DNA of 64,000 nucleotides from Octopus bimaculoides (lineage: Eukaryota). Below, in pieces: positions 1 to 60,064 of this stretch. The number at the start of each line of letters is the position of its first letter. The stretch's first letter is position 1. Made by a program: the position numbers and the translations under genes. The notes beneath the pieces are model-generated. The model saw only the letters and a program-made list of their open reading frames with translations, was not told where the DNA came from and searched no databases. The stretch lies in the NCBI RefSeq assembly GCF_001194135.2, contig NC_068989.1, positions 7,401,973 to 7,465,972 of the forward strand, in the 5' to 3' direction.

Positions 1-14
1 ACATACATATATAT

Positions 15-49
<35 letters not shown>

Positions 50-139
50 CAGATATATATAAATATATATATTCGTAAATATATATATATATAAATATAT
101 ATATATGTATGTATATTCTTATATATACATCTATCTATT

Positions 140-190
<51 letters not shown>

Positions 191-39510: not shown

Positions 39511-42500
39511 TTAGAAATTGTTCATTTCACAGTATTGCATTTTACCATTTCGATGCCAGTCAAATTTCCAAACAGCATTGTTTTCATGTTCTGTGACATA
39601 CAAAGTTTTGGAACGTGGCTCGAAATGAATGTTGCTTGGTTTTACAAAAGGACATTTGATTCTTTGGATAGGATTTCCACCTTTTGAGTTGAATACTTCT
39701 ATGTGACCACTGCCCCAGTTGGCTACAAGCAGGTTGTTGTCGTCATCAAAGTCCATGCCGTCTGCACCACCCTCGTGATCACCTATTTATAGAGGAAGGA
39801 AAGAAGTAAGGAAAGATGATTCAGATTTACAAGATTGACCTGACAGTAAATCAAAATTCCATAAATACTTAATATCCAAATTTATTTATTCATTTGGGAA
39901 AATGGTGTCGCTCAAGAAGGACTCCTGTTTGAACAATTTTCATGATGTTTCATATTTAGATGCTTTTATTATTGTGGAGGCACAATGGCCCAGTGGTTAG
40001 GGCAGCGGACTCGCAGTTTCGATTCCCAGACCAGGCGTTGTGAGTGTTTATTGAGCGAAAACACCTGAGGCTCCGGCAGGGGATGGTGGCGAACCCTGCT
40101 GTACTCTTCTACCACGACTTTCTCTCACTCTTACTTCCTGTTTCTGTTGTGCCTGTAATTCAAAGAAGCCAGTCGTATACTCTCTCTCTTTTACTCGTTT
40201 CAGTCATTTGACTGCGGCCATGCTGNNNNNNNNNNACCATGTGGTTGGTAAGCAAGCTACGTACCACACAGCCACTCCTGCACCTTGTTTACCTTTGTAA
40301 AGAGTTACGTCAATCCTTTTTAAAATAACAACAATAATAGTAATAATAAACAACCATACAAGAATAAAGAATGGAAACTTTACCTGGTATAGTAGCCCAG
40401 ACTTTCTTATTTGAAACACATCCTGGAGCTTCAATGTCATAACTCCAGAGAAGTTTCGTCGGAGTTTCTGCTACAATCAACTTCTGAGGTCGTCCATCGT
40501 TCAGATGTAAGACTGCAATTCCATTGGGAAACTTTAGACCTGTGTCAATTTTAATCATTTCTCCATCTGTGTAGCAGTAGACACTGCCAAATGGTTCCTG
40601 CAAAATAGGTGGAAACATTGAGCATATAACAAATGTACTGGAGTATTGACATATTACTTAAAATACCAGAATGCGTCTGGTATTCTTGCTGGTTGCTGCT
40701 GTGACGTTTTTCGTCTCCCTTCGATATTGTTTTCAACAAAGCTCGTCAATAGGAGATGTTATCTCAGGACAAACACCACAGTAACTGGCCTATCAATGGT
40801 ATATATACATTAAGTATGGCACAGAGACGATTATTTTAATTTAATACTGCATATACCAGATTTCTATTCAGCACATTGACTATTTAAGGTGTTCCTGTTG
40901 TGACTATCCCATCTGATTTTCAAACACGGTGTATCTAGAACTACATAAGTTTACATAGCATTCATTTTTAATTTTAACCCTTCACTTACCAACCTGGCTG
41001 AAACCAGCTCTGGCTCTGAGTACAAATGTCTTGTTTCCATAAGTTTTAAATTAAAATCTTCCACCAAACATTAGTCACAATTCATGTTCCTAACACTAGC
41101 TTAATGGTAACGAAGTTATTTTACTAAATTCTTTGTTATATTTAAAATTAATTGAAAGAAACACAGAGCATCTCAAAATAAATACAGTAACGAAAGGGTT
41201 AAGCTAGTTGAAGAAGATTTGAATGCTATTTCTAGCAGGTCGAGTGGTACATATAACGGAAAGATTACTTACCTCCGTTGATCGCCTGTATGGTGCTGGT
41301 GCAATATCTCCTGCTGGAGCTGTAATCCAAAGATTTCCTTGATAATCAAAGGCACAGTCATTGCAGCCTTGCATACATTGACCGGTCGAATCAATTGTTG
41401 CAACCTAAATATGGAATGGTAAAACATAAAATAAGCACTATTCTATATTTTTGAGATGAAGAATTATGTACGTTCTTTACATATATGTGTCCTCACCTTG
41501 TTTGTTGTTACAACAATGTTTCGGCTGATGTATTCTCCAGCCTTCATCAGGTGTCCTGGTGGAATTTCGAACCTGACCCTTTATTTGACTAAAGGGGTAC
41601 TCTGTTCTCATTCCTAAATTTTTATTTTTTTTTTGCTGATGTTATTAAAAGAGGCAGCACATATACTTGGGCACAATGACCTCCTAAACAGACTTAGTGC
41701 AATTATGAATGTAATATGGAAACTAGTATTAAGAAAAGATAAAATATTATGTTTATAAGCCCCAAAATTCACTCTATAATTGCCTATGGGCATATAGCGT
41801 AGTGAATAAGAGCGTGGGCTGCTAACCCTTGGATTCCGAGTTCAATCTCAGGCAGGGACTTCGGAAATAACATCATCATCATCGTTTAACGTCCGCTTTC
41901 CATGCTAGCATGGGTTGGAAGATTTGACTGAGGACTGGTGAAACCGGATGGAAACACCAGGCTCCAATCTAATTTGGCAGAGTTTCTACAGCTGGATGCC
42001 CTTCCTAACGCCAACCACTCAGAGAGTGTAGTGGGTGCTTTTACGTGTCACCCGCNNNNNNNNNNNNNNNNNNNNNNNNNNNNNNNNNNNNNNNNNNNNN
42101 NNNNNNNNNNNNNNNNNNNNNNNNNNNNNNNNNNNNNNNNNNNNNNNNNNNNNNNNNNNNNNNNNNNNNNNNNNNNNNNNNNNNNNNNNNNNNNNNNNNN
42201 NNNNNNNNNNNNNNNNNNNNNNNNNNNNNNNNNNNNNNNNNNNNNNNNNNNNNNNNNNNNNNNNNNNNNNNNNNNNNNNNNNNNNNNNNNNNNNNNNNNN
42301 NNNNNNNNNNNNNNNNNNNNNNNNNNNNNNNNNNNNNNNNNNNNNNNNNNNNNNNNNNNNNNNNNNNNNNNNNNNNNNNNNNNNNNNNNNNNNNNNNNNN
42401 NNNNNNNNNNNNNNNNNNNNNNNNNNNNNNNNNNNNNNNNNNNNNNNNNNNNNNNNNNNNNNNNNNNNNNNNNNNNNNNNNNNNNNNNNNNNNNNNNNNN

Positions 42501-45500
42501 NNNNNNNNNNNNNNNTCTTGCACACCACAACTGATGCTTCTTATGTTCAGCTTTTCTCTCAAGATACTTACACTCTGACGGGTATGCACACTGACATTAC
42601 ACATCCAGCGGAGCATACTGGCTTCATTCCTTGCGAGCTTACGCATGTCCTGTGTATGCTTGTTTTTGTGTTTGCGCTTGTCCTCCCCTACCCTTTTGAT
42701 AACCTGTGTTGGTTTGTTTATGTCCCTGTAGCTTAGTGGTTCAGCACTATAGAATACCTTAGGAATGAGAATGTATAAAATAAGCAGTTTACAAAAGTGA
42801 CCCTTTCTTCGGACAGCATTCTCCCAGGGATGCAAATTATGTTTAATCAATAAACCAGCATCCTTCATTTGCCAATAATAGTCATTAAAACAACAATATA
42901 AAGAATAATATCAAATTGTTTGAGAAAGTTCAGGGAGCTTTTACTTCTGTTGGTAACCAAAGGTCTCTCTCTCTGTCTTCTAGTAAAAGGAAGATTGTAT
43001 GATGCATGTGTACAAACTGCGATGCAACATGAGAGTGAGATGTCGTTAAACGATGATGATGATGATGATGATGATGAATGGGAAGGTGTTTAGGATTTAA
43101 ACTGGTGGAAGGTTTTAACTCAGATCATTTTAAAACATGGCGTCTGTGTGATAGAAGCAGGTGTGAATTCCAGCTAGTTGGTATGTATAAGATTAAGATA
43201 GCATTGGGCTCAAAATCCAATTCTAATCTGATACCAGCTATGTGATGACATACAAGCACTACTTATAGCAGACAGCACTCAAAACCTTTATTTGGTCGCC
43301 TGACCTATTAGAAATAAAGCTTATACCACACCGAAGGTATGGTCGTGTAAAGAAGCTTGCTTTGCAACTGTGTGGTTTCTGGTTCAGTTCCACTGTACAC
43401 CACCTTGGGAAGTAGAACGTATAATAATTCTAGTGAAATACATTCACTGATTTCAAATTTAGAAATAATACATTTCCTGTCGGCTTTGTAAACATAAGGA
43501 CACAGGAAATGTCTCCCCCTTGTAAACATAAGGACACTGGAAATGTGTGAAGGCCAACAGGAAGCAGTGCAGCTTCTTAGGTCCAAAACAACAGTAGTAT
43601 TATTCCCTTCATGGGACTGTCAACATTAAGTTGACAACATACAGCTACTTCATTGTATCACTACTGCATAAATCTCTCTGAGAGATTTAGAAATGTATTA
43701 TTTCTATTTTTTAAATCATTAAATGTATTTCACTAGAATTATTATATATTTACAAGAGCTTGACAGGCCATTGCTACTCCAGATTGATGATGAGCAAATA
43801 CTCAGAAACATGTCTCCGGATGCAGGGTTAGCTAAGTGGAGGTGCTTGTCTCCCCCTTGTAAGTATAAGGACACAGGAAATATGTCAAGGCCGACAGGAA
43901 GCAGTGCAGCTTCCTAGGTCCAAAACAACAGTAGTATTATTCCCTTCATGGGACTGACAACATTAAGTTGACAGCATACAACTACTTCATTGTATCACTA
44001 CTGCATAAATCTCTCTGGGAGATTTAGAAATGTATTATTTCTAAAAATGGAGTAAATTCGTTTGACTAAAATTCTTCACGGCAGTGCCCCAGCATGGCCG
44101 CAGTCTCATGTCTGAAGCCAAAGCAATAAAGGAATCGGATGGCCAGGAGGTTGATGAATGACATAATATTACTTTGACAGTATTTCAAACTGGCATTCCA
44201 TCATTTATGATCAAAAGGATCCCAGTTGGTCTGACCAACTGAAATTAACATGCAAGTGGCCGAGTACTCCACAGACACGTATACCCTTAACTGTAGTTCT
44301 TAGGGTGTGGCCCTTTGAAATACTCATTTTGATCAGCTGAGTGGATGGGAGCAATGTGAAATAAAGTGTCTTGCTCAAGGATACAATGTGATATCGGGAA
44401 TCGAACTCGCGACCTTATGATCATGAAGTGAATACTCTAACCACTAAGACATGCACATTCACACCTCCCCCTGGATGGAATGCCAGTCCATCACAGGTTT
44501 ACTTACTCACGACTAGGTGGACTGGAGTAATGTGAAATGCAGTGTTTTGCTCATGAATACAACACACTGCCCAATTCAGAAACTGAAACCGCGACCTTAT
44601 AATTCTAAATGCAACATCTTAACCACTAGGCTACATGCCTTCTTAGGAGTTGTTCACTTGACTATTGTGTCAATACTAGCTGCTTTGAAGGCAACGAGCT
44701 GGCAGAAATGTGAGCACGCCAGGCGAAATGCTTAGCGGTATTTCGTCTGTCTTTACGTTCTGAGTTCAAATTCTGCCGAGGTCGACTTTACCTTTCATCC
44801 TTTCGGGGTCGATAAATTAAGTACCAGTTATGCACTGGGGTCGATGTAATCGACTTAATCCCTTTGTCTGTCCTTGTTTAGCCCCTTGTGGGCACTAAAG
44901 AAATAGGAAACATTCTCGGGTCAATCTAATCGACTGGGCCCCCTCCTCCAAAATTTTGGGCCTTGTGTCTAGAGTAGAAAAGAATATTGTTACTTCTACC
45001 GAAGGCGGCGAGCTTACAAAAACATTAGAATGCCAGGCAAAATGCTTAGCGGTATTTCGTCTGTCTTTATGTTCCGAGTTCAAATTCCGCCAAGGTCGAC
45101 TTTGCCTTTCATCCTTTTGGGGGATCGATAAATTAAGTACCTGTTGTGTACTGGGGTCGATCTAATCGAGTGCTCCCCCCTCCCCCATAAATTTTCGGCC
45201 TTGTGTCAAGAGTAGAAAAGAATATTAACTGCTTTGAGATATTTTGAAGTAGCAACAAGCTCACCTCCTGCTAAATCTTTTACCTAATCACCGCCTCAGT
45301 TCTGACTGCCACCTAACAAGCTCCGCCCACAATATCCTGATAAAAAACCACTAATCAGCTCTTCCAATTACAAAAGTCAAAGAATAGTTGTCTGATATTT
45401 GTTTTTCCTGGTCTGTTATAATAACAACCTAACGTGTCTCCTTTTTTGAACTTAATGTAATCTCACACAAATAACACCTCAGCACATTCTTTTATGAACA

Positions 45501-48500
45501 TTTAACACACCTGACCCAATTCATAAATAATATAAAGCTTTCTGCTAAGAATCGCTCAAATACTTTTAAAAACATATGACAACAAAACCAAGCATATATT
45601 TTCAAAATAAGCAATTGTCACAACCGTGGCTGTTACAGATGATTTATATAATTGGAAACAGCAGGATTGTCACCACCTGCTGTATGCGTTTCTAGCTAAC
45701 ATTATCAGTCACACTGCAAAACAAGAGTCTTCATGAACTTAACTCTAGATAAACAATGTATTTTACTCATAAAGTCCTGTGGCAGTCTTGTAACACAGGT
45801 TTGTTGTTATCCATTCATTGTTGCAAATTGCTGACAGACAGATGGAAGATTAACCATTTAGCATTCAGATTATTCAAGCAAATGTAACATTTATTCATAT
45901 TGTTTCCAATGAATCATGCATTACGTTGTAACTTCAAGATTTCAAAGGTATGATTGCTAATTTTCAAAATGACATTTTAGAGTTGGTGTGAGAGTCCAGA
46001 TCTGACTAGGTTTAACATAAGACAGGTAGAATAATATTTGGGCTGGATTTGGCCTGCTTAAATGCTAAAGGATTAACATTCCTTTTATCTTTCTAGCAGA
46101 AGTTTTCCATTTAAATAATTGAAAAATCAATAATAAATCTCTCCACATTTCGGTGGCAAATATACTTCACGATGTGCTACTAGTGTTTTACATCTCGCTC
46201 AGAGATTTATTATCGCTTGTTTCCACTTTTTCGAGATCAGCGATGATTTGTCACTGGAAAAAGCATATAGTATTTTGCGTTTGGAATCAGTTCTCATCCC
46301 TAGTTGATGGCAGGTTACTTATTACTTTATTGCCCGCAAGGGGCTAAACATAGAGGGGACAAACAAGGACAGACAAAGACATTAAGTTGATTACACCGAC
46401 CCCAGTGCGTAACTGGTACTTAATTTATCAACCCCGAAAAGGATGAAAGGCAAAGTTGACCTCCTGCGGAATTTGAACTCAGAATGTAATGGCAGACGAA
46501 ATAGCACTAAGCATTTCGCCCGGCGTGCTAACGATTCTGCCAGCTCGCTGCAGGTTACTACCCAGAAACCCAGGCCTGTGTATCACGTAAAGCTGGAGAT
46601 GGGAACAATGATTTCCCTTCGCAAATACTAATCGGACACAGACAGTGTGTCGTTAGCCAGCTGGAGGAGATGTCTTCCTGGGGCTATAAACAACAGTAGC
46701 ATCGTCCCCTATGGGACCACCACATTTAGATGCCAAATATGCTTCATCATTGAAAAATGTTATTTTAAAAGCACTGAGATGATGTGACCTCTCCACATAA
46801 CTACTGACATCTCTCTCTCTTGGTCTGTCGATGCCTTTGAATGACACATCGGGCTGTCAGTGATCACCAGTTACCTCTGTCACTGTCATACTGGTATACT
46901 GCAAGTAATTTTTTAACAGCCTGTGATGGTTTGGCTTGTTTTCAATATTTTATTATTAACAATTACTGTACTCAGCAGACATACTTCCATCCAAGTTCCT
47001 AAGTCTACAACACTTCATCTCCCATTCATAATATGGCTGCATTATATGCAGAACAATTTTTGCATACAATTAATAATAAAAGAAGTGCGTTTTAAGCACA
47101 GACAAATATGGCAATTATTATTCTTTCTAATTTTGGTATGTGACCAGTGCTGGATTAACCAATACGCAAAAGAAGCACATGCTCAGGCCATCAGGGGAAG
47201 GAGAGAGGCAACACAGAAATGGTAAATGGTTTACAACACAAAAGAAATCACTTGCTAGAATAATATTCAAGATGCTTTATCTCTAATATGGATAAAAGCA
47301 GATGTGTTATGGAAGATTAATTTTGAGGATCTGATCAAAGACTTTGCAATTAAAAAAAGTAGGAGAAAACTTTTCAAATATAAGCAATGTGGAAGTATAC
47401 ACAAATAAATATTATTTTCCATGTTACTGTTAGTTTTGTTCCATTTTGAAAAATAGAAATTTATTTTATGGTTTATTAATTGTTGTAGCCTATGCCAGTG
47501 GTGTATAACCTTGCCCACTTATGAGTACTCTTCATTCATTGTGCCATCGTGAATAGTAAGACAAGCAAGACAAAAAAATGTGATTGATAGCGTGAATGAT
47601 CTTTACTACTTGGGAGCCTGGAAAAAAGATCAAAGCTTGTTAAAATGAAGGAAAATCATTGAATTTACCTGTTTATATGTTCCATTGAGTTTCACCTGAA
47701 GCAAACCAAGTCTCATGTCGGCCACAAAGAGGTTATCAAGGCGATCAAACTGACACCCAGCAGGGATTCCACCATAACCGTTGATTTCAGGTTCACACAG
47801 AATGGCATTCTGTCAAAATAAATGGTATATGATTAGAAACGGAATCAGGACACATTATTTATTTGCTTCTCGATGCTCCAGGAAGTCTATCTCTTATGTA
47901 TACCAATTGTTACCTGAAGGTATCAATTGGTATACATAAGTAGGTATATCAATACCTACTTGTTTCAGTCATTGGACTGTGGCCATGCTGGGGCATCACA
48001 CTGAAGTGTTTTAGTTGAACAAGTCAACCCCAGTACTCATAGTTTTTATAAATCTGGTACTTATTTTATTAGTCTTTTTTTTGCCAAACGGCTAAGTTAC
48101 AGAGGTGTAAACAAACCAACACTGGCTGTCAAGTGGTAGGGGAGCAGTGAGAAACGGTGACAGACAGGCAAGCAGACACACATATATGTATACACACATA
48201 TATATATGTACATATATGTAGGTAAATATATATGTGTGTGTGTATATGTATGTGTGTGTGTGTATACACTTTTTACCTACACTATTCACTTGTAAGGCAT
48301 TGGTTGGACCAGGGCTACAGTGAAAGACACTTACCCAAAGTGCTGGGCAATGGGGCTGAATCTGAAACCACATGGTTGCAAAGCGAGTTTCTGAACCACA
48401 CAGCCGTACCTATAACTACATGATCACATTTTTAAAAATTCAATCACATTCACACTTCCATGTATGTCACTTAACATTTTGTATCGAGTAGACAATCCTT

Positions 48501-51500
48501 AATGCAGTCCTTTTCATATTTTGAAAACCCTTAATAATTCATTAAGCTAGTGTTACTAACATAATACTTTACACAAAAGACTAACATACACTGCTTTCTC
48601 TACCTAGTTTCACATGAGTACCATGGGAAAGTACAGTTCGTTCTCATAAATAGTAAAAACCTTTGTATCATTAGCAAGTATCGTCGATACTCTCAGGTCA
48701 ATAAAATAAAGTACTGGAATTCATCATCATCATCATCATCGTTTAACGTCCGCTTTCCATGCTAGCATGGGTTGGACGATTTGACTGAGGATGGTAACAA
48801 TTAATACCCTGACTTTGTACCTAAATTAGGAACAATTATTATTGGAAAATTATGTACAAATGTACTCTAATTGGGATCAATGTCCTTGATAATGAGATGC
48901 AATTACTTTCCTTAGATAATGGGGAATTTCAAACAATCCTAGTAGTTCCTAGTAGAGTAGATATCCGTATTAATTCTTTAGCATTTAAGCTAGTCATATC
49001 CAGCCCAAATATTTTATCTGTTTTATGCTCAAACCAGCTAGATCTGATCTCTCACACCTACTCTGATAATGTTATTGAACTCTCAACCCGAGTCTCATAT
49101 CGGCTAAAAAGAGGTTATCAAGGCGACCAAACTGACATCCGGCAGGGATTCCACCATAACTATTGATCTCGGGTTCACGTAGAATGTATAATTAATTCAA
49201 AACAATGGCAGTAAATAAGCTCTACATTTGACAGAAAAATCTGTATGTTAAAGGGTTAATGCAGCTCTTATAATTATGCTGATCCTTGTAAGGAAAACTA
49301 TCAAGCTTGTTGGTAACAGTAGCTAAGATACCTATAACTACTAGGAGTGCTTTTACAAAAACCCTCCACAGTCTTCGCAGTTACCTCGCTAAGTCCTGGT
49401 ATTTCCTTATTTTTTCCCCCCTGTCCTTTAACTGCCACATTCATATCAGCAAGCATAGCCACATCTATGATGATGCACTCTTTAGATACTTTGTCGTCGT
49501 CGTCATTTAACATCTGCTTTCCATGCTAGCATGGGTTGGACGATTTGACTGAGGACTGGTGGACCAGGAGGCGACACCAGGCTCCAATTTGATTTGGCAG
49601 AGTTTCTACAGCTGGATGCCCTTCCTAACACCAACCACTCCGAGAGTGTAGTGGGTGCTTTTACGTGCCACCGGCACAAGGGCCAGTCAGGTGGTACTGG
49701 CGACGGCCTCGCTCAAAATGGTGCATTTTACGTGTCACCTGCACAAGAGCCAGTCCAGCAGCACTGGCAACGATCTCGCTCGAATGTCATATTGGCAACA
49801 GCCATGCTTGAAATGGTGTATTTTACGTGTCACCTGCACAAGAGCCAGTCCATCGGCACTGGCAACAATCTCACTCGAATATCTTTTCACGTGCCAGGGA
49901 GGCGACGTTTGTCCAAGATGATAATGTCCAGTCATCTTTCCTGAATCTCAAACTCAGTTTGTACAGTGAAGTCCCACAAGAATTCAGACTGATTATTCTA
50001 TCAAACTCTCTGTTTGATGTTAGTACCATTCTCTGCTTACTTCAAAAATCTCCTGACACGTTATTAGTAATTTTCCCCCACCAAGCTGAGCTTAGTTATA
50101 TACGCTTTTGTTTTCCCCATTTAGTTCTTAGTCTAACCGTTACAGTTTAAACAATACTGGTACAATACCTTGAACAATAGATACTAGCTGTCGGATGTCA
50201 TAAAAAAGTATATCTACCAACAGCTTTGATGTCGTTCAGAAACCCTGGCAACTGACAATATACTCATCAAAGTCACCTGTTCAGATAACATCTGGTACAG
50301 GTTTTCAGAATTCAATAATTGCACAATGAGCAGCAGATGCATGTAAGTAAATATTAATAGATGTAGCTAAAAATACATCCATCAAAGCAATGTGATAAAG
50401 AAATACAACTCCAGTAACACACCGGATATTGCTAACCTCATCAAAACTTCTCAAACGCAATAGATGAAAACAAGGAGTGACTGATTCAGTATTGACTCAG
50501 ACATTGATTTATCAATTTATGGTAGCACTGACTTCGACTCCCTCTTGGACTCTGACTCCTGTGTTTCAAATTAATCCAATATTTCTGACATCGATTGAAA
50601 GCTCAAAACAAGGATGGTTAAGGGAAGTCATCAGGATGCTTTGTGTCATCCAAACCTGTTGAAGTTTGACTTTAAAGAACATAACTGTGTCTCTGAGGCA
50701 TTTTTCTTACTTGTGAAGTGTCTTTGTTGCTCCCAAGGCCTAAGGAAGAGCCCTCCATGAGCGCTAGCTTATAAGCCACCCTATCGGGCGGATTTTAAGC
50801 TCGTTAATAATAATTGGATATTTTAAAAACAAACTTGGTTAGATATAAACCTTCTTTTCAGAATTCTAACATTGTTTTTTTTTATATAAAATTTAAGCGA
50901 ATGAAATATGAAAGATTATACGAAATGAGATACAAAATTATATTATAAAAGATTGAAGAGTTGATCCCTACAAAATTTAATAAAGAAACATTGTATCTAT
51001 AGAACAAGGGTTAAATAAAAATAAAAAAATTTACTAACAGGTGTGAATATGGTTGTGTTGTTAAGAAGCTTGTTTTGCGACCATGTAGCTTTGAGTTCAA
51101 TCCCACAGTACGGCACTTTGGGCAAGTGTCTATTACTACATCCTGGGCTGACCAATACCTTGTGAGTGAATCTGGTAGATGGAAACTGGGGGGAAACCTG
51201 TCATAAACATGTATGTGTGAGTGTGTGAGACATTGTGTTTGTCTCTTCCCCACCATTTGACAGTTGGTATTGGTCCCTGTAACTCAGCAGTTCAGTGAGA
51301 GAGCCTGATAAAATGAATACCAGACTTCAAAAAAAAAAAAACAAGTGCTGGAGTTGGTTTGTTCTGCCAAACCCTTCAAGGCAGTGCCCCAGCATGGCCT
51401 CAGTCCAACGACTAAAACAAATAAGAAGAGAAAAAGAAAGAAAGATAGATAACATCTTGTTCATAAGAAAGAGAACTGCTCCTCTCAGCTCCACCATCTC

Positions 51501-54500
51501 AGAAGTCCTTAAGTAGGAGTCGATAATTTTCAGTGCAGGAAGTCTACTCTGTAAAGTGGTTNNNNNNNNNNNNNNNNNNNNNNNNNNNNNNNNNNNNNNN
51601 NNNNNNNNNNNNNNNNNNNNNNNNNNNNNNNNNNNNNNNNNNNNNNNNNNNNNNNNNNNNNNNNNNNNNNNNNNNNNNNNNNNNNNNNNNNNNNNNNNNN
51701 NNNNNNNNNNNNNNNNNNNNNNNNNNNNNNNNNNNNNNNNNNNNNNNNNNNNNNNNNNNNNNNNNNNNNNNNNNNNNNNNNNNNNNNNNNNNNNNNNNNN
51801 NNNNNNNNNNNNNNNNNNNNNNNNNNNNNNNNNNNNNNNNNNNNNNNNNNNNNNNNNNNNNNNNNNNNNNNNNNNNNNNNNNNGCCCGCCAAAGCAGACC
51901 TTGCCGATGCTGGTGCTACATAAAAAGCACCCAGTCCAGTTTAAAGTGGTTGGCATTAGGAAGGGCATCCAGCCATAAAATGCCCGCCAAAGCAGACCTT
52001 GCCGATGCTGGTGCTACATAAAAAGCACCCAGTCCAGTTTAAAGTGGTTGGCATTAGGAAGGGCATCCAGCCATAAAATGCATGTCAAAACAGTGGAGCA
52101 TGGTGCAGTCCTCTGGCTTACCAGCTTCTAACAAATTGTCCAACCCATGACAGCATGGAAAATGAACATTAAATGGTGATGGTAATTATGATGACGATAT
52201 GATGACGATGATAGCATTTGTTGGTGATTGTGCATTTTTACCAACTTCGACTCAACGGCACTGACCAATGCATAATCAAAATGGAACTCAGAATTAAACA
52301 ATTGAAAAGAACATAGACAGGTGCAGGCAAGATTGTGTGGTTAAAAAGCTCACTTCGCAACCACAAGGTTTTGGGTTCAGTCCCAATGTGTGACACCTTA
52401 GGCAAGTGTCTTTTAATATAGCCTTGGGCTGACCAATGCCTTATGGGTGATTTTGATAGCTGGAAACTATGTGGAAGCCCACCGAGTATGTGTATGGTTG
52501 TGTGTGTGCGCGTGCACATGTATGTATGTTTGTTCCCTCTACCACTGCTTTGTAACTGGTGTTGGTTTGTTTATGTCCCTGTAACACTGGTCTGGCAAAA
52601 GAAATTGACAGAGTAAATACCAGACTTTAAAAATAGTATCGGCTTGAACTTAAAATGCTCCAAGGTGGTGGTCCAGCTTGGCTGCAGTCCAATGAGTGAA
52701 GCAAATAAAAGAAAAGATTTAAAAAACTTAAAACTTCTTAGCAAATTTTTAGAAATATAAAATGGTTAAGTTGGACACAGAACACTCAGATATCAACCGA
52801 CACCATAGGAGACCACTGAACACAAAACACAACCATACATATACACACATCTTTGAATAACTGGCTGAAACATGTGAAAACCTGTTTTTACTTTTGCTGG
52901 ATAAAACAGCAAATATTTTATATACTAAGTAATTAAATAGTCAAATCAATGCTAATAAACAAGGCATGAAAAAAAAAAAAAGAGATGACAAATATTTCTG
53001 TAGCTATATTTAATCAATATTTCAATGCTTATCATTATTATTATCATTCTGTAGTCTTATTATTATCACGTGCTTTCACTGCACTACCAAGCGCAGCTCT
53101 GTGTTCCTTGGGTATGTGCTGTGGTTTGTTGTGATGCTCTTATGGTTACTGCATTGAAAGTGTTTTATGTAGGATGTGTGCGGTGCCTAGTAGTGCTATT
53201 TTCTGTATGTTATATATATTTGTAAGTCCTGGTGTTTTTGTTACATATTTGTCTGAATATTTTTTTTATCATACCTAATACGCCCACTATGATAGGAATT
53301 GTTTCTGTTTTTAAACTCCACATTCAGGTTACCTCTATTTCCGGGTCTTTGGATTTTGAAAGTCTCTCCATTTCTTTTAGAGAAATTATTATTATTAAGG
53401 CGGTGAGCTGGCAGAATCATTAGCATGCTGGACAAAATGCTTAGCAGTATTTCACCTGTCCTGGTCTTCTTAGCCCACTTGTATGTTTCTTCTAACTCAT
53501 GTTGCAGGTGCACAGCATCTCCAGGGTTTTCTATCACCTGTGGGACTTTTGTATCATCTGCATAACTTGTGATCGTGGCTAAGGGCATATCTGAGAGGAC
53601 CATTATAGACAGTAGTGGTCCCAAAACAGTGCCTTGCAGAACCCCACTCACTGTTTGCATGTCATTGGCTACTACTGAAGAAAATGAATTAGCTTAAGTT
53701 TGTACTCAATATTTTATTTATTGTGTGTGTGTGTGTGTGTTTGTGTGCTCATGCATGCAGTTTGTGTGCTCGTGCATGCATAAATTGAGATTTCTTAAAG
53801 CTATAACCACAAAGAGTTATTTGTTATGTTACGCTTACCCCCTACTGGTTGATCTTTTCCATTTCTTTGTTACGTTAAAATGTTTTGTATTTTCTCTTTA
53901 TCGTCTCCTCTTCTCTCTCTCCCTTCATCCCTTTCGCATGGAAAAGATCAAAATTTAGGATCTCAGATTCACAAACAATATGGACATTGTTCATGATGTG
54001 AAAGTGACGCCAACATTAATTTCAGATAATGGAGCTATCTACGTATGGACCAAAAGTAGCCAGAGACATACAGCCTAAAGGAAGCACCCAAAATCTCTCC
54101 AGTCTTAATTTCCACAAAGCAAACTGGAAATTGATCCAAAAAGAGATCCTTAGACAGAAATACAAAGAGATACAAATGAGAAAAAAATACCAAAAATGCA
54201 TGAATATTGCATATATTTCTATAGCAATATTCTTTTCTACTCTAGGTACAAGGCCTGAAATTTTTGGGGAGGGGGCCAGTCGATTAGATTGACACCAGTA
54301 CACAACTAGTACTTTAATTTATCAACCCTGAAAGGATTTCTATAGCAGTATTATCATGCTAGAATGGACATATTGTGATATATAGAACTAAGAAAGTCAG
54401 AACAGATAAACTGAATAAGATTACTCCATAGCATTATATTTCTGATTTGAAATATGAAATCAAAGTTCTAAATGAACAGATATAAATAAAGGAAATAACA

Positions 54501-57500
54501 TTAATACATGGGTGTGTTTGGAAGCTTATAACTGGAGAGGCATGGAAGGATATACATTCAGGAGATAAAAAATGTGAGATAAGGCATGATCAACTGGAAG
54601 TAATGTGAATAGATAGGCATTAGGTTTGACAGATTAACATTAGAGTTAATCTGAATACTTGAATTAACCCTTTCATGACCAACCTGGCTGAAACCAGCTC
54701 TGGCTCTGAGTACAAATGTCTGGTTTTCATAAGTTTTGAATTAAAATCTTCCACCAAACCTTAGTTATAAATTATGTAACTAACACTAGCTGAATGGTAA
54801 CTAAGTCATTTTACTAAATTCTTTGTTATATCTAAAATTAATTGAAAGAAACACAAAACATCTCAACATAAATATGGTCACAAAAGGGTTAAAATATATA
54901 ACAGAGAAACAATTCTTAACCCTTTTGATACCATCCCAGCTGAAACCACCTCTGGTTCTGAGTACAAATGTCTTGTTTCCATTATGTCAGACATAAGAAG
55001 CATCAGATGTGGTGTGCAAGAGAGATGACTGTGCTGGTATGGTCATGTGCTGCGTATGGATGAGGAGAGCTGTGTGAAGAAATGTCACACTGTGGAAGAG
55101 GTAGACCCAAGAAGACACAGATTGAGGTGGTGAAGCACGACCTTCGAACGTTGAGCCTCACAGAAGCAATGACAAGCAGCTGAGACCTTTGGAGATATGC
55201 TGTGCTTGAGAAGACCCGGTAAGCCAGGTGAGACCCTAGTCGTGGTTGATGCCGGTGTCACATAACTGGCCCATTTAAAAGCACCCTTGGGCAATATGCT
55301 GTGCTTGTGAAGACCTGTTGAATGGAGTGAAATTGTAGTCGTGGCCGACGCCAGTGCCACCTGATTGGCACCCATGCTGGGTGTAGGTATATATATAGCT
55401 GTGTTTGTTGGTTTGTTTTCTTTCCGTAAATGATAAAGTTGTGGGTGAAGATGTTTATGTTAGCGTATGGTGTGTAATGTGTGTGTGCAGGGTGGGGGGT
55501 CTGTGTATATGTGGGGATACAATTTGTGTGAAGGGGTATGTGTTGNNNNNNNNNNNNNNNNNNNNNNNNNNNNNNNNNNNNNNNNNNNNNNNNNNNNNNN
55601 NNNNNNNNNNNNNNNNNNNNNNNNNNNNNNNNNNNNNNNNNNNNNNNNNNNNNNNNNNNNNNNNNNNNNNNNNNNNNNNNNNNNNNNNNNNNNNNNNNNN
55701 NNNNNNNNNNNNNNNNNNNNNNNNNNNNNNNNNNNNNNNNNNNNNNNNNNNNNNNNNNNNNNNNNNNNNNNNNNNNNNNNNNNNNNNNNNNNNNNNNNNN
55801 NNNNNNNNNNNNNNNNNNNNNNNNNNNNNNNNNNNNNNNNNNNNNNNNNNNNNNNNNNNNNNNNNNNNNNNNNNNNNNNNNNNNNNNNNNNNNNNNNNNN
55901 NNNNNNNNNNNNNNNNNNNNNNNNNNNNNNNNNNNNNNNNNNNNNNNNNNNNNNNNNNNNNNNNNNNNNNNNNNNNNNNNNNNNNNNNNNNNNNNNNNNN
56001 NNNNNNNNNNNNNNNNNNNNNNNNNNNNNNNNNNNNNNNNNNNNNNNNNNNNNNNNNNNNNNNNNNNNNNNNNNNNNNNNNNNNNNNNNNNNNNNNNNNN
56101 NNNNNNNNNNNNNNNNNNNNNNNNNNNNNNNNNNNNNNNNNNNNNNNNNNNNNNNNNNNNNNNNNNNNNNNNNNNNNNNNNNNNNNNNNNNNNNNNNNNN
56201 NNNNNNNNNNNNNNNNNNNNNNNNNNNNNNNNNNNNNNNNNNNNNNNNNNNNNNNNNNNNNNNNNNNNNNNNNNNNNNNNNNNNNNNNNNNNNNNNNNNN
56301 NNNNNNNNNNNNNNNNNNNNNNNNNNNNNNNNNNNNNNNNNNNNNNNNNNNNNNNNNNNNNNNNNNNNNNNNNNNNNNNNNNNNNNNNNNNNNNNNNNNN
56401 NNNNNNNNNNNNNNNNNNNNNNNNNNNNNNNNNNNNNNNNTGGTTAGCTTGCTTACCAACCACATGGTTCCGGGTTCAGTCCCACTGCGTGGCATCTTGA
56501 GCAAGTGTCTTCTACTATAGCCTCGGGCCGACCAAAGCCTTGTGAGTGGATTTGGTAGACGGAAACTGAAAGAAACCCGTCGTATATATGTATATATATA
56601 TATGTGTGTATGTGTGTGTATATGTTTGCGTGTCTGTGTTTGTCCCCCCAACATCGCTTGACAACCGATGCTGGTGTGTTTACGTCCCCCGTAACTTAGC
56701 AGTTCGGCAGAAGAGACTGATAGAATAAGTACTAGGCTTACAAAGAATAAGTCCTGAGGACCATTGGCTCGATTAAAGGCGATGCTCCAGCCTGGCCGCA
56801 GTCAAATGACTGAAACAAGTAAAAGAGCTGATAAAAGTGCTTTCATTTTCTCTATGAAAATGTCTTCAGTGTTTGCATTAACTCCCCCTGATTTGAAGGC
56901 TGGACCTCAATGTTACGGCTATACCGCAAAGGAATGTAACTATTACCACAAGGCATTTAGAGCAGTACTCGACCCGGATATGTACGGTGTGAGGTATAAT
57001 TCCATACACTTCCTTTGTGTGTGTGTGTGTGTGTGTGTGTAAGGAGGGGGAGAAATGGTGAATGTAATAAACTGTGAACAGCTGGTACTTTTTTCAAACT
57101 CATTGCAAACGGGTATTATTACTGCATAAATCGCATAACTAAATCTTGATACAATTTTTTTTTTGCTCCCTTCATAGTTTTAGCTTTGCCCCGTGTATAA
57201 AATCGCACCCCAGTATTTTCAGATAAAATCGGTCACAGAATCGGTGCAACGTATACAAGAATAAATACGGCAATTGTTTAGAATTTAGTGCAACAAGAGC
57301 TGTGATTGTTGTACGATATCCACAAATTCCGGGAAATACGAGACCGACAACCAGTTTTAAATAACCATGTCTCTTTTATTCAAATGAGTAATTCTTTTGA
57401 CGAAGGCATAACTAACCTAATTTCTTTTATAACATACAAACGTATGATATGATTCAGCGCCTATTCAAGGAAATGAATAATCATTGAATTATGAATGTTG

Positions 57501-58439
57501 GAATACGTACTAATATAATTTATACTATATCGATATTGCATACCCTTCGACGTGGAAATACAATAAGCATTTTCTCCCTCGAATTTTTAATCCACCACTT
57601 TTTCGATCTCACGATGTACTTTTGTTTCTTTGTCCATATGTGTGTGTGGATAGATAGATAGATAGATGATTAGAGTTAGACAGATAGAATGATAGATAGA
57701 TACTTATCAATATTAAGAATGGTCTCAGTTCTCAATCACAGAAACTTGAAAAGCATATGAAAAAAATCGACGTGTAGTATAAATTAAGAAAGAGGGCCAA
57801 GTGATGGATTACCAGGGATCTTTTGCAACAACTAAACCGTTAAGAAGTATTTGTTTGATTAAAATTAAGACCACAACTCTAATTTAGATTATCAGCTGGA
57901 CCTAATATATTTTTGCCCGGATGTAAAACGGGACCGCCTTACCGATTCTCTGTTCCCTATAAACCTATGTATGTAAATNNNNNNNNNNNNNNNNNNNNNN
58001 NNNNNNNNNNNNNNNNNNNNNNNNNNNNNNNNNNNNNNNNNNNNNNNNNNNNNNNNNNNNNNNNNNNNNNNNNNNNNNNNNNNNNNNNNNNNNNNNNNNN
58101 NNNNNNNNNNNNNNNNNNNNNNNNNNNNNNNNNNNNNNNNNNNNNNNNNNNNNNNNNNNNNNNNNNNNNNNNNNNNNNNNNNNNNNATATATATATATAT
58201 ATATATATATATAATAATTTCTAAAAGATGATCGATATCGAACGATGAAAATTTTCTTCACTTACTTTATTTGTTTTCAAATTCACACACAATATCTGGC
58301 CGGCAGGTTTATCGTTTTTTTCCACTTCGGGAGCCACAACGTAAAAACAACCTGATTTATCAAAGACAGGGCCTTCTGAACCAAGAACATCTGATGCCAC
58401 TTTGGTAAATAAAGGTTCATCGACTGGTATACTTTCCAT
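39511..58439 (-). CDS. Squid-type diisopropylfluorophosphatase (DFPase; Ca2+-dependent six-bladed beta-propeller phosphotriesterase, SMP-30/gluconolactonase superfamily), 310 aa, 5 exons
   Basis: Exons (minus strand) 58439-58266, 47809-47669, 41404-41273, 40597-40384 and 39782-39511 (933 nt), GT-AG, phases 0,0,0,1. Collinear with Loligo vulgaris DFPase: EPLFTKV, EGPVFDK, APEVE, GYGGIPAGCQ, FVADMRLGLL, MQGCNDCAFDY, FPNGIAV, LIVAETPTK, HEGGADGMDFD, LLVANWGS, KPSN, VTEHENNAVWKF. Confidence 0.96.
40974..41202. mobile_element. TTAA-flanked MITE, second family (AACCTGGCTGAAACC...TCTGAGTACAAATGTC core)
   Basis: TIRs TTAACCCTT and AAGGGTTAA, about 229 bp. Further copies at 54664-54892, 54917-54980 (partial), about 60540-60652 (partial) and 60675-60903. 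Confidence 0.8.
42517..42672 (-). mobile_element. RTE-clade LINE ORF2 fragment next to an assembly gap
   Basis: DMRKLARNEASMLRWMCNVSVHTRQSVSILREKLNIRSISCGVQ. The matching 3' tail lies across the gap at about 41875-42055. Confidence 0.75.
43511..44043 (+). repeat. Direct duplication of 196 bp (43511-43706 and 43848-44043)
   Basis: The two copies are collinear with scattered substitutions. A partial third copy lies at about 63779-63861. Confidence 0.85.
44690..45225 (+). mobile_element. Tandem/composite SINEs of the GAAGGCGGCGAGCTGGCAGAA...GAGTTCAAATTC family
   Basis: Repeated unit TTCTGAGTTCAAATTCCGCCGAGGTCGACTTTGCCTTTCATCC...TAAGTACCAGT...GGGGTCGAT. Similar clusters (approximate): 19250-19790(-), 30715-31150(-), 28545-28725(+), 46320-46550(-), 5964-6090(+), 20860-20985(-). 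Confidence 0.8.
45850..46076. mobile_element. TTAA-flanked MITE, TTAACCCTTTAGCATT family
   Basis: Imperfect TIRs TTAACCATTTAGCATT and AATGCTAAAGGATTAA. A longer, gapped relative lies at 36311-37355 and a fragment at about 33155-33215. Confidence 0.75.
47145..47410 (+). mobile_element. Internally deleted hAT transposon relic
   Basis: Terminus-like CAGTGCTGGATTAACC at 47145. 47268-47400 encodes QDALSLIWIKADVLWKINFEDLIKDFAIKKSRRKLF, resembling the hAT transposase C-terminus. A related terminus (reverse) lies at about 33790-33831. Confidence 0.65.
47893..47959. other. Near-perfect fold-back (17-bp stem + mismatch + 4-5 bp) followed by an 8-bp hairpin
   Basis: CTTATGTATACCAATTG (47893-47909) pairs with CAATTGGTATACATAAG (47924-47940); GTAGGTAT (47940-47947) pairs with ATACCTAC (47952-47959). 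Confidence 0.9.
48970..49259. mobile_element. TTAA-flanked (piggyBac-like) MITE carrying the DFPase exon fragment
   Basis: Ends TTAATTCTTTAGCATT and ATGTTAAAGGGTTAA. Both arms match the sister copy at 45850-46076 in reverse orientation, but the central part is replaced by DFPase sequence. Confidence 0.8.
49084..49186 (-). pseudogene. Partial copy of DFPase exon 2 embedded in a MITE
   Basis: Ungapped 103-nt match to 47702-47804 with 14 mismatches. Translates as ILREPEINSYGGIPAGCQFGRLDNLFLADMRLGL. It has no acceptor AG or donor GT and is bracketed by in-frame TAA stops. Confidence 0.9.
49300..50130 (-). mobile_element. Degenerate R4/Dong-like (restriction-like endonuclease) non-LTR retrotransposon fragment
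   Basis: After removing the nested insert the minus strand reads WY*HQTESLIE...FLWDFTVQTEFEIQER*LDIIILDK|VSKECIIIDVAMLADMNV. This is the characteristic WYxH / LWDFxIQTD / (PD)IxIxDK..ECxIIDVAxP RLE region. Confidence 0.75.
49496..49907 (-). mobile_element. 5'-truncated RTE tail/SINE inserted into an older RLE-type LINE, with a 6-bp TSD
   Basis: Standard RTE 3'UTR on the minus strand, flanked by TTTGTC at 49490-49495 and 49908-49913. Confidence 0.85.
53462..53660 (-). mobile_element. CR1/L2-like LINE reverse transcriptase fragment
   Basis: SGVLQGTVLGPLL...YADDTK...LQHELEETYKWA (RT motifs PQG..LGP and YADD). Confidence 0.85.
53955..54170 (+). mobile_element. CR1/L2-like LINE endonuclease C-terminus/linker fragment
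   Basis: DLRFTNNMDIVHDVKVTPTLISDN (LDLxFTN...SDH-like), then, after a frameshift, LNFHKANWKLIQKEI. Confidence 0.7.
54664..54892. mobile_element. TTAA-flanked MITE, second family
   Basis: High similarity to 40974-41202, with TTAACCCTTT and AAAGGGTTAA ends. Confidence 0.8.
54985..55380 (+). mobile_element. RTE-clade LINE 3' fragment
   Basis: Degenerate IRSIRCGVQER..CWYGHVLRMDEESCVKKC..GRPKKT..EVVKHDLRTLSLTEAMT. Confidence 0.75.
56441..56826 (+). mobile_element. tRNA-derived SINE with internal (TA)/(TG) microsatellite (most abundant family in the window)
   Basis: ...GCTTACCAACCACATGGTTCCGGGTTCAGTCCCACTGCG...(TA)n(TG)n...GCAGTCAAATGACTGAAACAAGTAAAAG. Other copies (approximate): 2288-2620(-), 3895-4110(-), 6355-6550(+), 14358-14720(-), 25354-25560(+), 26555-26720(-), 35830-36012(-), 47958-48410(-), 51040-51425(+), 52320-52712(+), 60065-60500(-), 61510-61806(+). 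Confidence 0.85.
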
Positions 58440-60064
58440 GGTATCTCGCACTTGACGACGTCCGTAACATAGAACTTCAACGTTGCAAATATGTTGATAC
58501 GAATGTCTCTTACTCTGTCTTTCTCACATTGTCACCACTCTTCCTCACTCTCATTTCCATATTCTCTCTCTCTCTCTCTCTCTATCTATCTTTCCCTCTA
58601 ATTTCTCATTAATTCACATCGCTCCTTACACAGCTTTTTCATTCTCTTTCTGTTCACACACCTTTTTGGGGTTTTTTTTGTTTCATTTCGTTCATTTCAT
58701 TCTTCTAACTTATTAATTTTTCCTATTTTTTCTGTCATTTCACTACCCCCCCCTCTTTCTCTCACTCATTACTCCTCTTTCATTATTATTTAAATATTTC
58801 TCATCATTCACCGGCAACATCTCTTACACATCTACAAGAAACAGCAAACTACGTGGAAACTAATGATGGTTTCGTGACAGTAAATAAATAACACGACCAA
58901 AAATTATAAGATAACAGGTAGCATACTTGATGCCGTAAAGAACGAAAAAAAAAACTGTTTCGGAATAAACTATTAGTACCTTATGGGGAAAGAAAAGTGA
59001 CAGAATTGGAATATAAAATATAGAGAAAAAATGAAATTCTGGGGAGAAAAGAGAAAATCTTTGAGAATCTAATATCCGTGTACGAAACAGAATACTTAAA
59101 GAAAAAAAAAGAAAAAAGCCCAACACCTGTTTGTTTACCATCAGGTATACTGAAACTCCGCAAATAACAACAAAAACAACAATAATAATAATAATGAATA
59201 AATAAAAAAATATATCTTTATATATATGTATATCTTAAGTGTGGAGGTGCAATGGCCCAGTCATAGGATCGCGGTTTCGATTCCTAGACCGGGCGTTGTG
59301 AGTGTTTATTGAGCGAAAAGACCTAAAAGCTTCACGAGGCTCCGGCAGGGGTGGGGGTGGAGTGTCTGTGGAGTGCTCAGCCACTTGCACGTTAATTTCA
59401 CGAGCAGGCTGTTCCGTTGATCGGATCAACTGGAACCCCTCGACGTCGTAAGCGACGGAGTGCCAACAACATATCTTAAGTAATGAAAACGATCATTGCC
59501 CGAACGATCGATATTAGTAAGAAAAGACTGAGATAACCCCACCAGAATAAAATTAAAGAAAAATTAACATATGAAAGGGAATCATTATGCTAGCACAACT
59601 GATAACACCAGACACATTCGGGTACCGGTTGCATTGATAACAAGCTCGATGAGGCGTCCTTTTGGGGTTAAAAAATGGTAGTTAAGTCGGTTCGTACGGA
59701 ATAGCTATGATGAAGTGGAGACAAGCATTACTTTACAGAACAGTTACTACTTTCAGTTCTTATAGAAATATTCTAATTACTTTGCTTTCTTGTTTTATCG
59801 ATCTTCACTATATTCTATATTTCATGAAATTTTCGGGGTTGTCTCACCTTGCTTTTTTTTTAAATTTTGTTCTTTGTTATCACAACTAATCATTTCGTTG
59901 AGGGATTCCAAACGATTTTTCACTTCTGGACCCATTTCTTTACCGTTTTACTCTGATGGGCCGTCATAACCATTCGATGTTTAATAACTGGTTTTACAGA
60001 GACATTTTGCAAAATTCGAATTTTGCTTTTCATCCATTCATTTTCTTTTCTTTTTTTTATTTTT

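What the first reader, a model, noticed from the sequence alone, without database searches (positions are those of the whole stretch)
48970..49259. DFPase exon-2 fragment captured inside a piggyBac-like MITE, with synonymous-biased divergence implying a hidden DFPase paralog or formerly functional exon
Seen: 49084-49186 is an ungapped 103-nt copy of DFPase exon 2 (47702-47804, 89/103 identical). It sits between the intact TIR arms of a TTAA-MITE and replaces the central segment present in the sister copy at 45850-46076. Codon comparison gives 10 of 14 differences at synonymous third positions; only C>R, G>S, D>G and V>L change. Established: Pack-type non-autonomous DNA transposons acquire host gene pieces, commonly explained by template switching during gap repair. 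Inference: a neutral copy that had diverged this much at synonymous sites should carry many more replacement changes. The donor was therefore probably under purifying selection for most of the divergence. It would be either a second DFPase gene elsewhere or a duplicated/alternative exon 2 that later lost its splice sites. This would be Pack-TE-like exon capture in a cephalopod, involving a nerve-agent-degrading enzyme gene.
Basis: partly seen in the sequence, partly recalled or inferred. Interest (0 to 1): 0.78.

Follow-up and report, generated by a model that had tools for sequence, protein, structure and literature searches.

The report
DFPase exon piece trapped inside octopus MITE
A 103-base piece of the octopus DFPase gene's second exon was copied long ago into the middle of a small "jumping gene" sitting 1.4 kb away in the same gene; this is an ordinary repair scar of a known kind, except that its oldest differences from the exon are oddly silent.

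Summary
49084-49186 is an ungapped 89/103 copy of DFPase exon 2 (47702-47804). It lies between the two arms of one TTAA-flanked MITE whose family has a few thousand genomic copies, and it replaces about 41 nt of the family's core. The insert is single-copy. In four organism-A datasets and one related species, only this copy and exon 2 match it at 80% or more. No relic of the other DFPase exons exists, and each Octopus proteome has one DFPase. An extant hidden paralog is therefore not supported. The chimera is orthologous in O. sinensis, O. vulgaris and a fourth species, so it is old. It has no splice sites, is absent from RNA, and has evolved neutrally between species (omega about 1). It fits the known single-copy Pack-TIR class: repair gap-filling inside a transposon using a nearby template, with CATT microhomology at one junction. 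A neutral-copy model with exon and copy branches tied to the same time is rejected (LRT 8-10, bootstrap 0/350). CpG-aware simulations give at most 1.6%. This is either chance on 34 codons or a lost, once-constrained donor. Best reading: capture in cis from exon 2 (about 0.55); lost second exon 2 or paralog (about 0.3).

The parts
48970..48973 (.). TTAA target-site copy at one end of the MITE
   Evidence: Read depth rises from 0-3 to hundreds here. Family members have unrelated AT-rich flanks outside it.
48974..49079 (-). MITE arm (3' arm in gene orientation). Family terminal repeat is CCCTTTAGCATT.
   Evidence: 79% identical to sister 46076-45968. Depth about 1000-1900 per run at about 0.7x sampling, so roughly 2-3 thousand copies. 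The family consensus continues as ...CCTACAATGTCATTCTAAAAATAAAC where this copy switches to exon sequence.
49080..49083 (-). Four unassigned bases at the junction: CTCT here, CTTT in O. sinensis and O. vulgaris
   Evidence: They match neither the MITE consensus nor exon 2.
49084..49186 (-). Captured fragment of DFPase exon 2 (exon nt 6-108; open frame ILREPEINSYGGIPAGCQFGRLDNLFLADMRLGL)
   Evidence: 89/103 identical to 47702-47804. Single copy in the genome. RNA depth zero. Orthologous in O. sinensis, O. vulgaris and organism B.
49183..49186 (-). Junction microhomology: AATG on the + strand, CATT on the gene strand, shared by exon 2 and the MITE consensus
   Evidence: Exon reads ...CAGAATGGCAT, MITE consensus reads ...GATAATGCATG, and the element reads ...TAGAATGTATA.
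49187..49255 (-). Other MITE arm (5' arm in gene orientation)
   Evidence: 19/21 match to the family consensus directly after the junction. Depth about 1000-1900. 71% identical to sister 45926-45850.
49256..49259 (.). TTAA at the other end
   Evidence: Depth falls to single-copy level after 49259.
47669..47809 (-). DFPase exon 2, the nearest and most likely template (homologous part 47702-47804)
   Evidence: AG and GT splice sites are present. RNA contigs cover 47667-47809 and join it directly to the end of exon 1.
45850..46076 (+). Canonical sister MITE in intron 2, core about 45927-45967
39511..58439 (-). DFPase gene. Coding exons lie at about 58266-58439, 47669-47809, 41273-41404, 40384-40597 and 39511-39782. 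The chimeric MITE lies in intron 1.
   Evidence: tblastn and splice-site reading. The translation is identical to XP_014768571.1.

Best explanation
This is a single-copy Pack-TIR-type chimera.

Proposed sequence of events:
1. A piggyBac-like (TTAA) MITE was already sitting in intron 1 of the DFPase gene.
2. It suffered a break in its core, either an internal break or an abortive excision.
3. During synthesis-dependent repair the growing strand left the MITE template and copied 103 nt of DFPase exon 2, which lay 1-2.5 kb downstream on the same strand.
4. It returned to the MITE at a CATT microhomology. The other junction took up 4 stray bases.
5. About 41 nt of MITE core were replaced.

This happened before O. 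bimaculoides, O. sinensis/O. vulgaris and a fourth species split. The chimera never amplified, is not spliced into mRNA, and has decayed neutrally since.

Shown: the structure, the copy number, the orthology, the lack of expression and the neutral crown evolution. Inferred: the repair mechanism, and that the neighbouring exon 2 was the template. On this reading the excess of silent differences on the oldest branch is chance, or rate heterogeneity, on 34 codons.
For: - Both arms belong to one high-copy family, in the correct mutual orientation, bounded by TTAA. The inner breakpoints are only about 41 nt apart in the consensus.
- The insert is single-copy.
- The only other homologous sequence in the genome is exon 2, 1382 nt away in the same orientation.
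- There is 4-nt microhomology at one junction and a 4-nt filler at the other.
- These are the hallmarks reported for animal single-copy Pack-TIRs: 57% lie within 15 kb of the parent, mostly under 5 kb; 68% have microhomology at a breakpoint; and breakpoints are internal (PMC8277862).
- The chimera is orthologous and collinear in O. sinensis and O. vulgaris, where a later SINE-like insertion is nested in one arm. It is also present in organism B.
- Copy versus copy between species gives Sd=2, Nd=7, omega about 1, with a 9-nt deletion in one lineage.
- RNA depth is 0 on the copy against about 100-190 on exon 2.
- Four to seven changes on the copy's stem branch (4-7%) fit the stem divergence of the arms (at most 10%).
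Against: The oldest differences are almost all silent. Between the ancestral copy and the ancestral exon there are 5-8 silent differences against 1-2 replacements.

I fitted a codon model in which the copy is neutral from its origin and paralogous branches share the same time.
- The model is rejected with LRT 9.95 (chi-square p=0.0016); 0 of 350 parametric bootstraps reach that value.
- It remains rejected at p=0.001-0.013 after dropping the junction codons, the CpG codons or the outgroup, or after changing codon frequencies.
- Forward simulations with CpG transitions up to 20-fold faster give at most 1.6% for even a conservative version of the pattern.

Exon-copy dS is about 0.5-0.6. That is several times the copy-copy distance of about 0.1, and larger than the MITE arms' age allows.

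Caveats on this counter-evidence: only 34 codons are available; the finding was selected because of this pattern; and with free branch lengths the test has no power (p=0.38).
Confidence: 0.55

Rival explanations
1. Same repair-capture mechanism, but the template was a second exon-2 sequence that was functional at the time. It could have been a tandemly duplicated alternative exon 2' in intron 1 or a nearby DFPase paralog. It had been diverging from exon 2 under purifying selection and has since been deleted. The 103-nt insert would then be its only relic.
For: - Silent excess on the pre-speciation branch: omega on that branch is 0.06-0.12, LRT 8.1-10.3, bootstrap 0/350, and simulations give at most 1.6% under the neutral alternative.
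- Neutral evolution afterwards.
- Exon-copy dS exceeds what the age of the MITE arms allows.
- The position, upstream of exon 2 in the same orientation, is where a tandem exon duplicate would lie.
- Intron 1 has turned over heavily, so a deletion is plausible. Exon 2 lies about 23.7 kb into the O. sinensis gene, against a 10.5-kb intron 1 here.
Against: - No third exon-2-like sequence in the window or in the O. sinensis, O. vulgaris or Argonauta loci.
- None in whole-run contigs of organism A or organism B at 80% identity or more.
- No relics of exons 1, 3, 4 or 5.
- No flank homology indicating a larger tandem duplication.
- One DFPase per Octopus proteome, and one in Argonauta.
- It requires an extra entity and its complete loss before the species split.
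Confidence: 0.3
2. A still-existing DFPase paralog elsewhere in this genome, closer than 86% to the insert, was the donor.
For: Only the synonymous bias itself.
Against: - Exactly two contigs cover the insert in each of X1, X7, X2 and X12: the copy itself with 0 differences and exon 2 with 14 differences. The same is true of organism B.
- Raw-read depth over the insert is 1-4 at 80% likeness.
- No extra copies of the other exons.
- A single DFPase protein cluster.
Confidence: 0.02
3. The fragment is an old duplicated exon decaying in place, and the two MITE arms are independent half-elements that happen to flank it.
For: Position and orientation relative to exon 2 fit this. The silent bias would also fit a formerly functional exon.
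Against: - The arms are complementary halves of one family, correctly oriented, with outer TTAA ends and inner breakpoints 41 nt apart in the consensus.
- The family has roughly one copy per Mb, so two truncated copies bracketing 103 nt are very unlikely.
- The fragment lacks 38 nt of the exon and all splice signals.
- No intron flanks are shared.
Confidence: 0.03
4. The insert is currently used as an alternative or exonised exon of DFPase.
For: The 34-codon frame is open in O. bimaculoides.
Against: - RNA depth is zero in two raw RNA runs and two RNA contig sets, while exon 2 has about 100-190x. Transcripts join exon 1 directly to exon 2.
- In-frame TAA stops lie on both sides, and there is no usable AG or GT.
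- Replacements and a 9-nt deletion have accumulated in each lineage.
Confidence: 0.01

Closest known systems
Single-copy Pack-TIRs of animals, formed by transposition-independent gap-filling (Tan et al. 2021, Nat Commun 12:4280, PMC8277862)
   Same: - TIR-transposon termini on both sides with a host fragment in the middle.
- The parental sequence lies under 5 kb away in cis.
- Microhomology at a breakpoint and a short de novo insertion at the other.
- Internal breakpoints with a small gap in the TE.
- Single copy.
- piggyBac-type Pack-TIRs are on record there (medaka piggyBAC-N1_OL).
   Different: - The host is a cephalopod. That survey of 100 UCSC genomes lists no octopus or mollusc.
- The TE gap is about 18% of the element, against a median of 4.6%.
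- The age of capture cannot be checked against an 'empty' orthologous MITE.
- The exon-copy divergence is unexpectedly silent.
Pack-MULEs and other Pack-type elements of plants
   Same: A non-autonomous TIR element carries a gene fragment between intact ends.
   Different: Many Pack-MULEs are multicopy and have transposed after capture. Here there is no sign of mobilisation after capture. The superfamily also differs (TTAA/piggyBac-like).
Filler DNA and internal-deletion derivatives from P-element or Ac/Ds gap repair
   Same: A break inside or at a transposon is repaired by copying, with template switching to nearby sequence and short homologies at the joints.
   Different: Those events were observed experimentally. 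Here the process is inferred from an old scar tens of percent diverged.
Tandemly duplicated, mutually exclusive exons
   Same: A second copy of an exon lies in the upstream intron in the same orientation, and the divergence pattern resembles two constrained copies.
   Different: There are no splice sites, only 103 of 141 nt are present, the fragment is embedded in a transposon, it is not expressed, and no flanking intron homology exists.

Membership tests
Pack-TIR (TIR transposon carrying a duplicated host fragment) | Both termini belong to one TIR-TE family, in inverted orientation, with target-site duplication | tested here: met
   The arms match the sister copy and a family of a few thousand copies. 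The terminal repeat is CCCTTTAGCATT and TTAA lies at both ends. TTAA is always the target for this family, so the duplication carries little information on its own.
Pack-TIR (TIR transposon carrying a duplicated host fragment) | The internal segment is non-TE sequence with a parental copy elsewhere in the genome | tested here: met
   The insert has depth 1-4 against about 1000-1900 for the arms. The only other match is DFPase exon 2.
Pack-TIR (TIR transposon carrying a duplicated host fragment) | Gap-filling signature: cis parent, microhomology at a breakpoint, internal breakpoints | tested here: met
   The parent lies 1382 nt away. CATT microhomology is at one junction and a 4-nt filler at the other. 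The gap is about 41 nt of the 227-nt sister copy.
Pack-TIR (TIR transposon carrying a duplicated host fragment) | An orthologous 'empty' TE in an outgroup, showing that capture followed insertion | not testable with these tools
   All four Octopus species examined already carry the chimera. Argonauta intron 1 has neither the MITE nor the copy and is not alignable.
Pack-TIR, multicopy or mobilised subclass (Pack-MULE-like) | Several copies of the same chimera with different flanks | tested here: not met
   One locus only in four organism-A datasets and in organism B.
piggyBac-superfamily MITE | TTAA target site and CC(C/T)-initiated terminal inverted repeats | tested here: met
   The family consensus reads TTAA|CCCTTTAGCATT at both ends, and flanks diverge immediately outside TTAA.
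piggyBac-superfamily MITE | An autonomous partner encoding a piggyBac (DDD) transposase with the same termini | not tested
   No search for the autonomous element was made. O. vulgaris repeat annotation lists PiggyBac families (PMC13282606) but was not linked to this MITE.
Alternative or mutually exclusive exon | Splice acceptor and donor sites, a frame compatible with neighbouring exons, and presence in transcripts | tested here: not met
   There is no AG or GT at the borders and TAA stops lie in frame on both sides. Only 103 of 141 nt are present. RNA depth is zero.
DFPase paralog or pseudogene | Other exons of the gene present as a second copy, or a second protein in the proteome | tested here: not met
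   Exons 3-5 are at single-copy depth and there is no second exon 1. There is one DFPase cluster for O. bimaculoides, O. sinensis and O. vulgaris. tblastn finds nothing else in the window.
Processed (retro-)copy | Spans exon-exon junctions, carries a poly(A) tail, has target-site duplications of LINE type | tested here: not met
   The homology lies wholly within one exon and is bounded by MITE sequence.

The most novel reading that the evidence does not exclude
The 103-nt insert is the only surviving trace of a second, once-functional DFPase exon 2 in the ancestor of Octopus. That sequence would have been either a tandem alternative exon in intron 1 or a lost paralog. It was copied into the MITE shortly before the extant species split, and the donor was deleted afterwards. 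On this reading the transposon has preserved a molecular fossil of a lost coding sequence.
Probability: 0.3. Interest if true: 0.55.

Novelty: new member of a known kind. Interest (0 to 1): 0.33.

Why it matters
This is a clean, datable animal example of a DNA transposon picking up a coding-exon fragment by repair in cis. The host lineage, cephalopods, was not covered by the one systematic animal survey I found (PMC8277862). It has no visible consequence for DFPase: the fragment is not spliced in and is decaying. The only point of wider interest is the silent-site excess. If a lost constrained donor is confirmed, it would show that Pack-type captures can preserve relics of vanished exons or genes, and it would reveal past duplication of a gene that is single-copy in the Octopus and Argonauta data examined here.

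Tried and rejected
1. A codon model with free branch lengths had no power, because it places all silent changes on the exon stem (p=0.38). I replaced it with a model that ties exon and copy branches of the same genome to the same neutral time.
2. CpG hypermutability as the cause of the silent excess: dropping the two CpG-boundary codons still gives p=0.013. Simulations with CpG rates 5-20x higher give at most 1.6%.
3. Junction artefact (codon GGG at the edge of the homology): dropping it still gives p=0.005.
4. Gene conversion from exon 2 into the O. sinensis/O. vulgaris copies as the explanation for why replacements look lineage-specific: rejected, because shared silent differences are interleaved with those sites.
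5. RNA-editing-templated capture: only one of the old differences is A>G.
6. A larger tandem duplication: there is no homology between the flanks of exon 2 and the rest of intron 1 apart from SINE-like and microsatellite repeats.
7. Homology extending into the acceptor region (BLASTN 47702-47821): the extra 17 nt are better explained by the MITE consensus, which matches 19/21.
No species that would break up the stem branch could be added.
9. One of three differences in the organism-B copy lies within about 30 nt of an aligned piece's end and could not be located. Organism B was therefore used only as a robustness check.
10. Literature: no report of DFPase duplication in cephalopods or of Pack-type capture in molluscs turned up in the searched library.
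Full report
**What is there**

The window carries one DFPase (diisopropyl-fluorophosphatase) gene on the minus strand. It has five coding exons, at about 58266-58439, 47669-47809, 41273-41404, 40384-40597 and 39511-39782. Its translation is identical to XP_014768571.1 of Octopus bimaculoides. The exon-2 peptide matches the solved Loligo DFPase structures.

The finding lies in intron 1, 1382 nt upstream of exon 2 and in the same orientation.
- 49084-49186 is 89/103 identical to 47702-47804 without gaps, with BLASTN E about 5e-27 within the window.
- It covers exon nucleotides 6-108 of 141, so it lacks the first 5 nt, the last 33 nt and both splice sites.

**The MITE frame**

- The arms 48970-49079 and 49183-49259 align to the two ends of the sister element 45850-46076, at 79% and 71%.
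- I laid genomic reads on 48900-49330 at 80% likeness. Depth was about 1000-1900 per run over both arms at roughly 0.7x genome sampling, which implies a few thousand copies. Flanks outside the two TTAA ends were at single-copy depth, and the insert had depth 1-4.
- The loose-end consensus from the same call gives the canonical family sequence across both breakpoints. The family core continues ...CCTACAATGTCATTCTAAAAATAAAC... after about 49076 and ...CAAGATAATGCATGATTAATTC... before 49191.
- One junction therefore lies in a 4-nt stretch shared by exon 2 and the MITE (AATG on the + strand, CATT on the gene strand; 49183-49186).
- The other junction carries four unassigned bases (49080-49083).
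- About 41 nt of core (sister 45927-45967) are replaced by the exon fragment.
- The terminal repeat CCCTTTAGCATT next to TTAA fits a piggyBac-like MITE. I did not look for the autonomous partner.

**Copy number and the hidden-paralog idea**

- Whole-run contig sets of four organism-A datasets from three studies (X1, X7, X2, X12) each contain exactly two contigs matching the insert at 80% or more. One is the locus itself, with 0 differences and spanning both junctions. The other is exon 2, with 14 differences.
- A related species about 5% diverged (organism B) also has exactly two: an orthologous copy and its own exon 2.
- Exons 3, 4 and 5 are at single-copy depth, and there is no second exon 1.
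- tblastn finds no other DFPase piece in the window or in the three fetched loci.
- The protein database holds one DFPase each for O. bimaculoides, O. sinensis, O. vulgaris and Argonauta hians.
- An extant paralog closer than 86%, and other MITE copies with the same insert, are therefore not supported.

**Age**

- In O. sinensis (L001) and O. vulgaris (L003) the same chimera sits at the collinear place in intron 1. It has both arms and the exon fragment, a 9-nt deletion in the fragment, and a 410-427-nt SINE-like element nested in one arm.
- Argonauta hians (L002) has exon 2 only.
- The capture therefore predates the split of these Octopus species.
- In the arms, 17 of 170 positions differ from the family majority in all three species. 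Two are specific to O. bimaculoides and 7 to O. sinensis plus O. vulgaris.

**Function**

- RNA reads and RNA contigs cover exon 2 at about 100-190x and join it directly to the end of exon 1. The copy has depth zero.
- The MITE arms put TAA stops in frame 4 codons upstream and 3 codons downstream of the fragment. There is no usable AG or GT.
- Between species the copies differ by Sd=2, Nd=7 (omega about 1), against omega 0.06 for the exons.
- The fragment is not an exon now, and it cannot have been one since it came to lie between these arms.

**Mechanism**

The anatomy matches what Tan et al. (PMC8277862) describe for single-copy Pack-TIRs in animals. Their features are: a break inside a resident TIR element repaired by copying with template switching to a nearby filler; 57% of cases within 15 kb of the parent, mostly under 5 kb; microhomology at a breakpoint in 68%; and internal breakpoints. 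piggyBac-type cases are listed there, but no octopus or mollusc is. I infer the same process here, with the neighbouring exon 2 as the natural template. The process itself is not observed.

**The silent-site excess**

Even so, 10 of 14 silent gives p about 0.01-0.05.

Using the orthologous copies, the replacements C>R, G>S and D>G are specific to the O. bimaculoides side, with one of them possibly unresolved in organism B. The O. sinensis/O. vulgaris side has its own replacements: Q>H, A>T and D>N, plus I>S in O. sinensis only. The differences shared by all copies against all exons are CTA, CCC, GAG, GCC, GGA and GGG (silent) and GTG>TTx.

I wrote a GY94-type codon likelihood for 34 codons and 7 sequences.
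- With free branch lengths it has no power (p=0.38).
- With exon and copy branches of the same genome tied to the same neutral time, 'copy neutral from its origin' is rejected against 'free omega on the copy's stem branch'. LRT is 9.95, chi-square p=0.0016 and omega 0.06.
- No replicate among 350 parametric bootstraps reaches the observed value, and the null distribution is well calibrated: 5.7% of replicates exceed 3.84.
- The result holds at p=0.001-0.013 without the outgroup, with equal codon frequencies, with organism B substituted, and after dropping the junction codons or the two CpG-boundary codons. It weakens to 0.04-0.09 only after removing four informative codons.
- Forward simulations with CpG transitions up to 20-fold faster, at the most favourable branch length, give at most 1.6% for 'at least 5 silent and at most 1 replaced codon'.

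**What the excess means**

Either it is a roughly 1-in-100 outcome on a very short sequence that was picked out because of this pattern. Or the sequence that was copied had been evolving as coding sequence apart from today's exon-2 lineage, as a tandem alternative exon 2' or a nearby paralog that has since been lost.

Against the second reading:
- It needs an extra entity that has vanished without trace from four species.
- A donor far from this locus would leave the position of the chimera, 1.4 kb upstream of the homologous exon in the same orientation, as a coincidence.

A tandem exon 2' would explain the position equally well. I put plain cis capture from exon 2 at about 0.55 and a lost constrained donor at about 0.3. 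The remainder goes to minor alternatives: two independent half-elements, an extant paralog, or current exon use, each of which is contradicted by a direct test above.

**Verdict**

- The Pack-type capture is supported, and it is a new member of a known kind.
- The extant-paralog and in-place former-exon readings are not supported.
- The synonymous bias is real and remains unexplained. Resolving it needs genomes of other octopodids, which these tools could not reach.

Noticed in passing
window 48716-48843, 49494-49555, 47948-48011, 39940-40340, 41000-41260: Pieces of an extremely abundant SINE-like repeat. Summed contig depth runs into the millions and RNA read depth into the thousands. It flanks the chimeric MITE on both sides (direct repeat D5).
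   Followed up: partly
L001 23767-24193; L003 23705-24114: O. sinensis and O. vulgaris carry a 410-427-nt SINE-like insertion, with an internal (CA)/(TA) microsatellite, nested in the arm of the orthologous chimeric MITE. It is absent in O. bimaculoides.
   Followed up: partly
window 49185/49186 (organism B contig): In the related species (run X20) the contig carrying the orthologous copy leaves the window sequence exactly at the exon/MITE junction. It continues as TCTTGTACTTGTTTCAGTCATTTGAC, which resembles the start of the SINE-like insertion seen in O. sinensis and O. vulgaris. This is either an independent nested insertion or a contig break at a repeat.
   Followed up: no
window 47782 and 47686 (exon 2 codons 10 and 42): O. 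bimaculoides has Asn (AAC, AAT) where O. sinensis, O. vulgaris and organism B have Asp (GAY). The MITE-borne copies and Argonauta have AAT at codon 10, so Asn/Asp toggles at this position.
   Followed up: partly
window 39796: A 12-nt indel polymorphism just upstream of exon 5 among organism-A datasets: the 12 nt are left out in X7 and X2 contigs.
   Followed up: no
window 40374-40635 (exon 4 and flanks) in organism B: Organism B differs from the window at about 30 of 358 positions here, including a cluster of transversions at 40412-40433. This is much more than in exon 2 or exon 5, so this part of DFPase (around ...EAPGCVSNKK...) evolves fast.
   Followed up: no
window 1-2000 and 4001-6000: Very low G+C (0.21 and 0.17), with GC skew +0.43 in the second block. 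These are probably long simple or satellite repeats.
   Followed up: no
window 58288-58460 (exon 1): The contig sets of runs X1 and X2 hold no contig for exon 1, although X7 does. This is likely an assembly dropout and illustrates that contigs show presence, not absence.
   Followed up: no
window 48160-48270: A compound (CA)n/(TA)n microsatellite with many slipped read joints in RNA and DNA.
   Followed up: no
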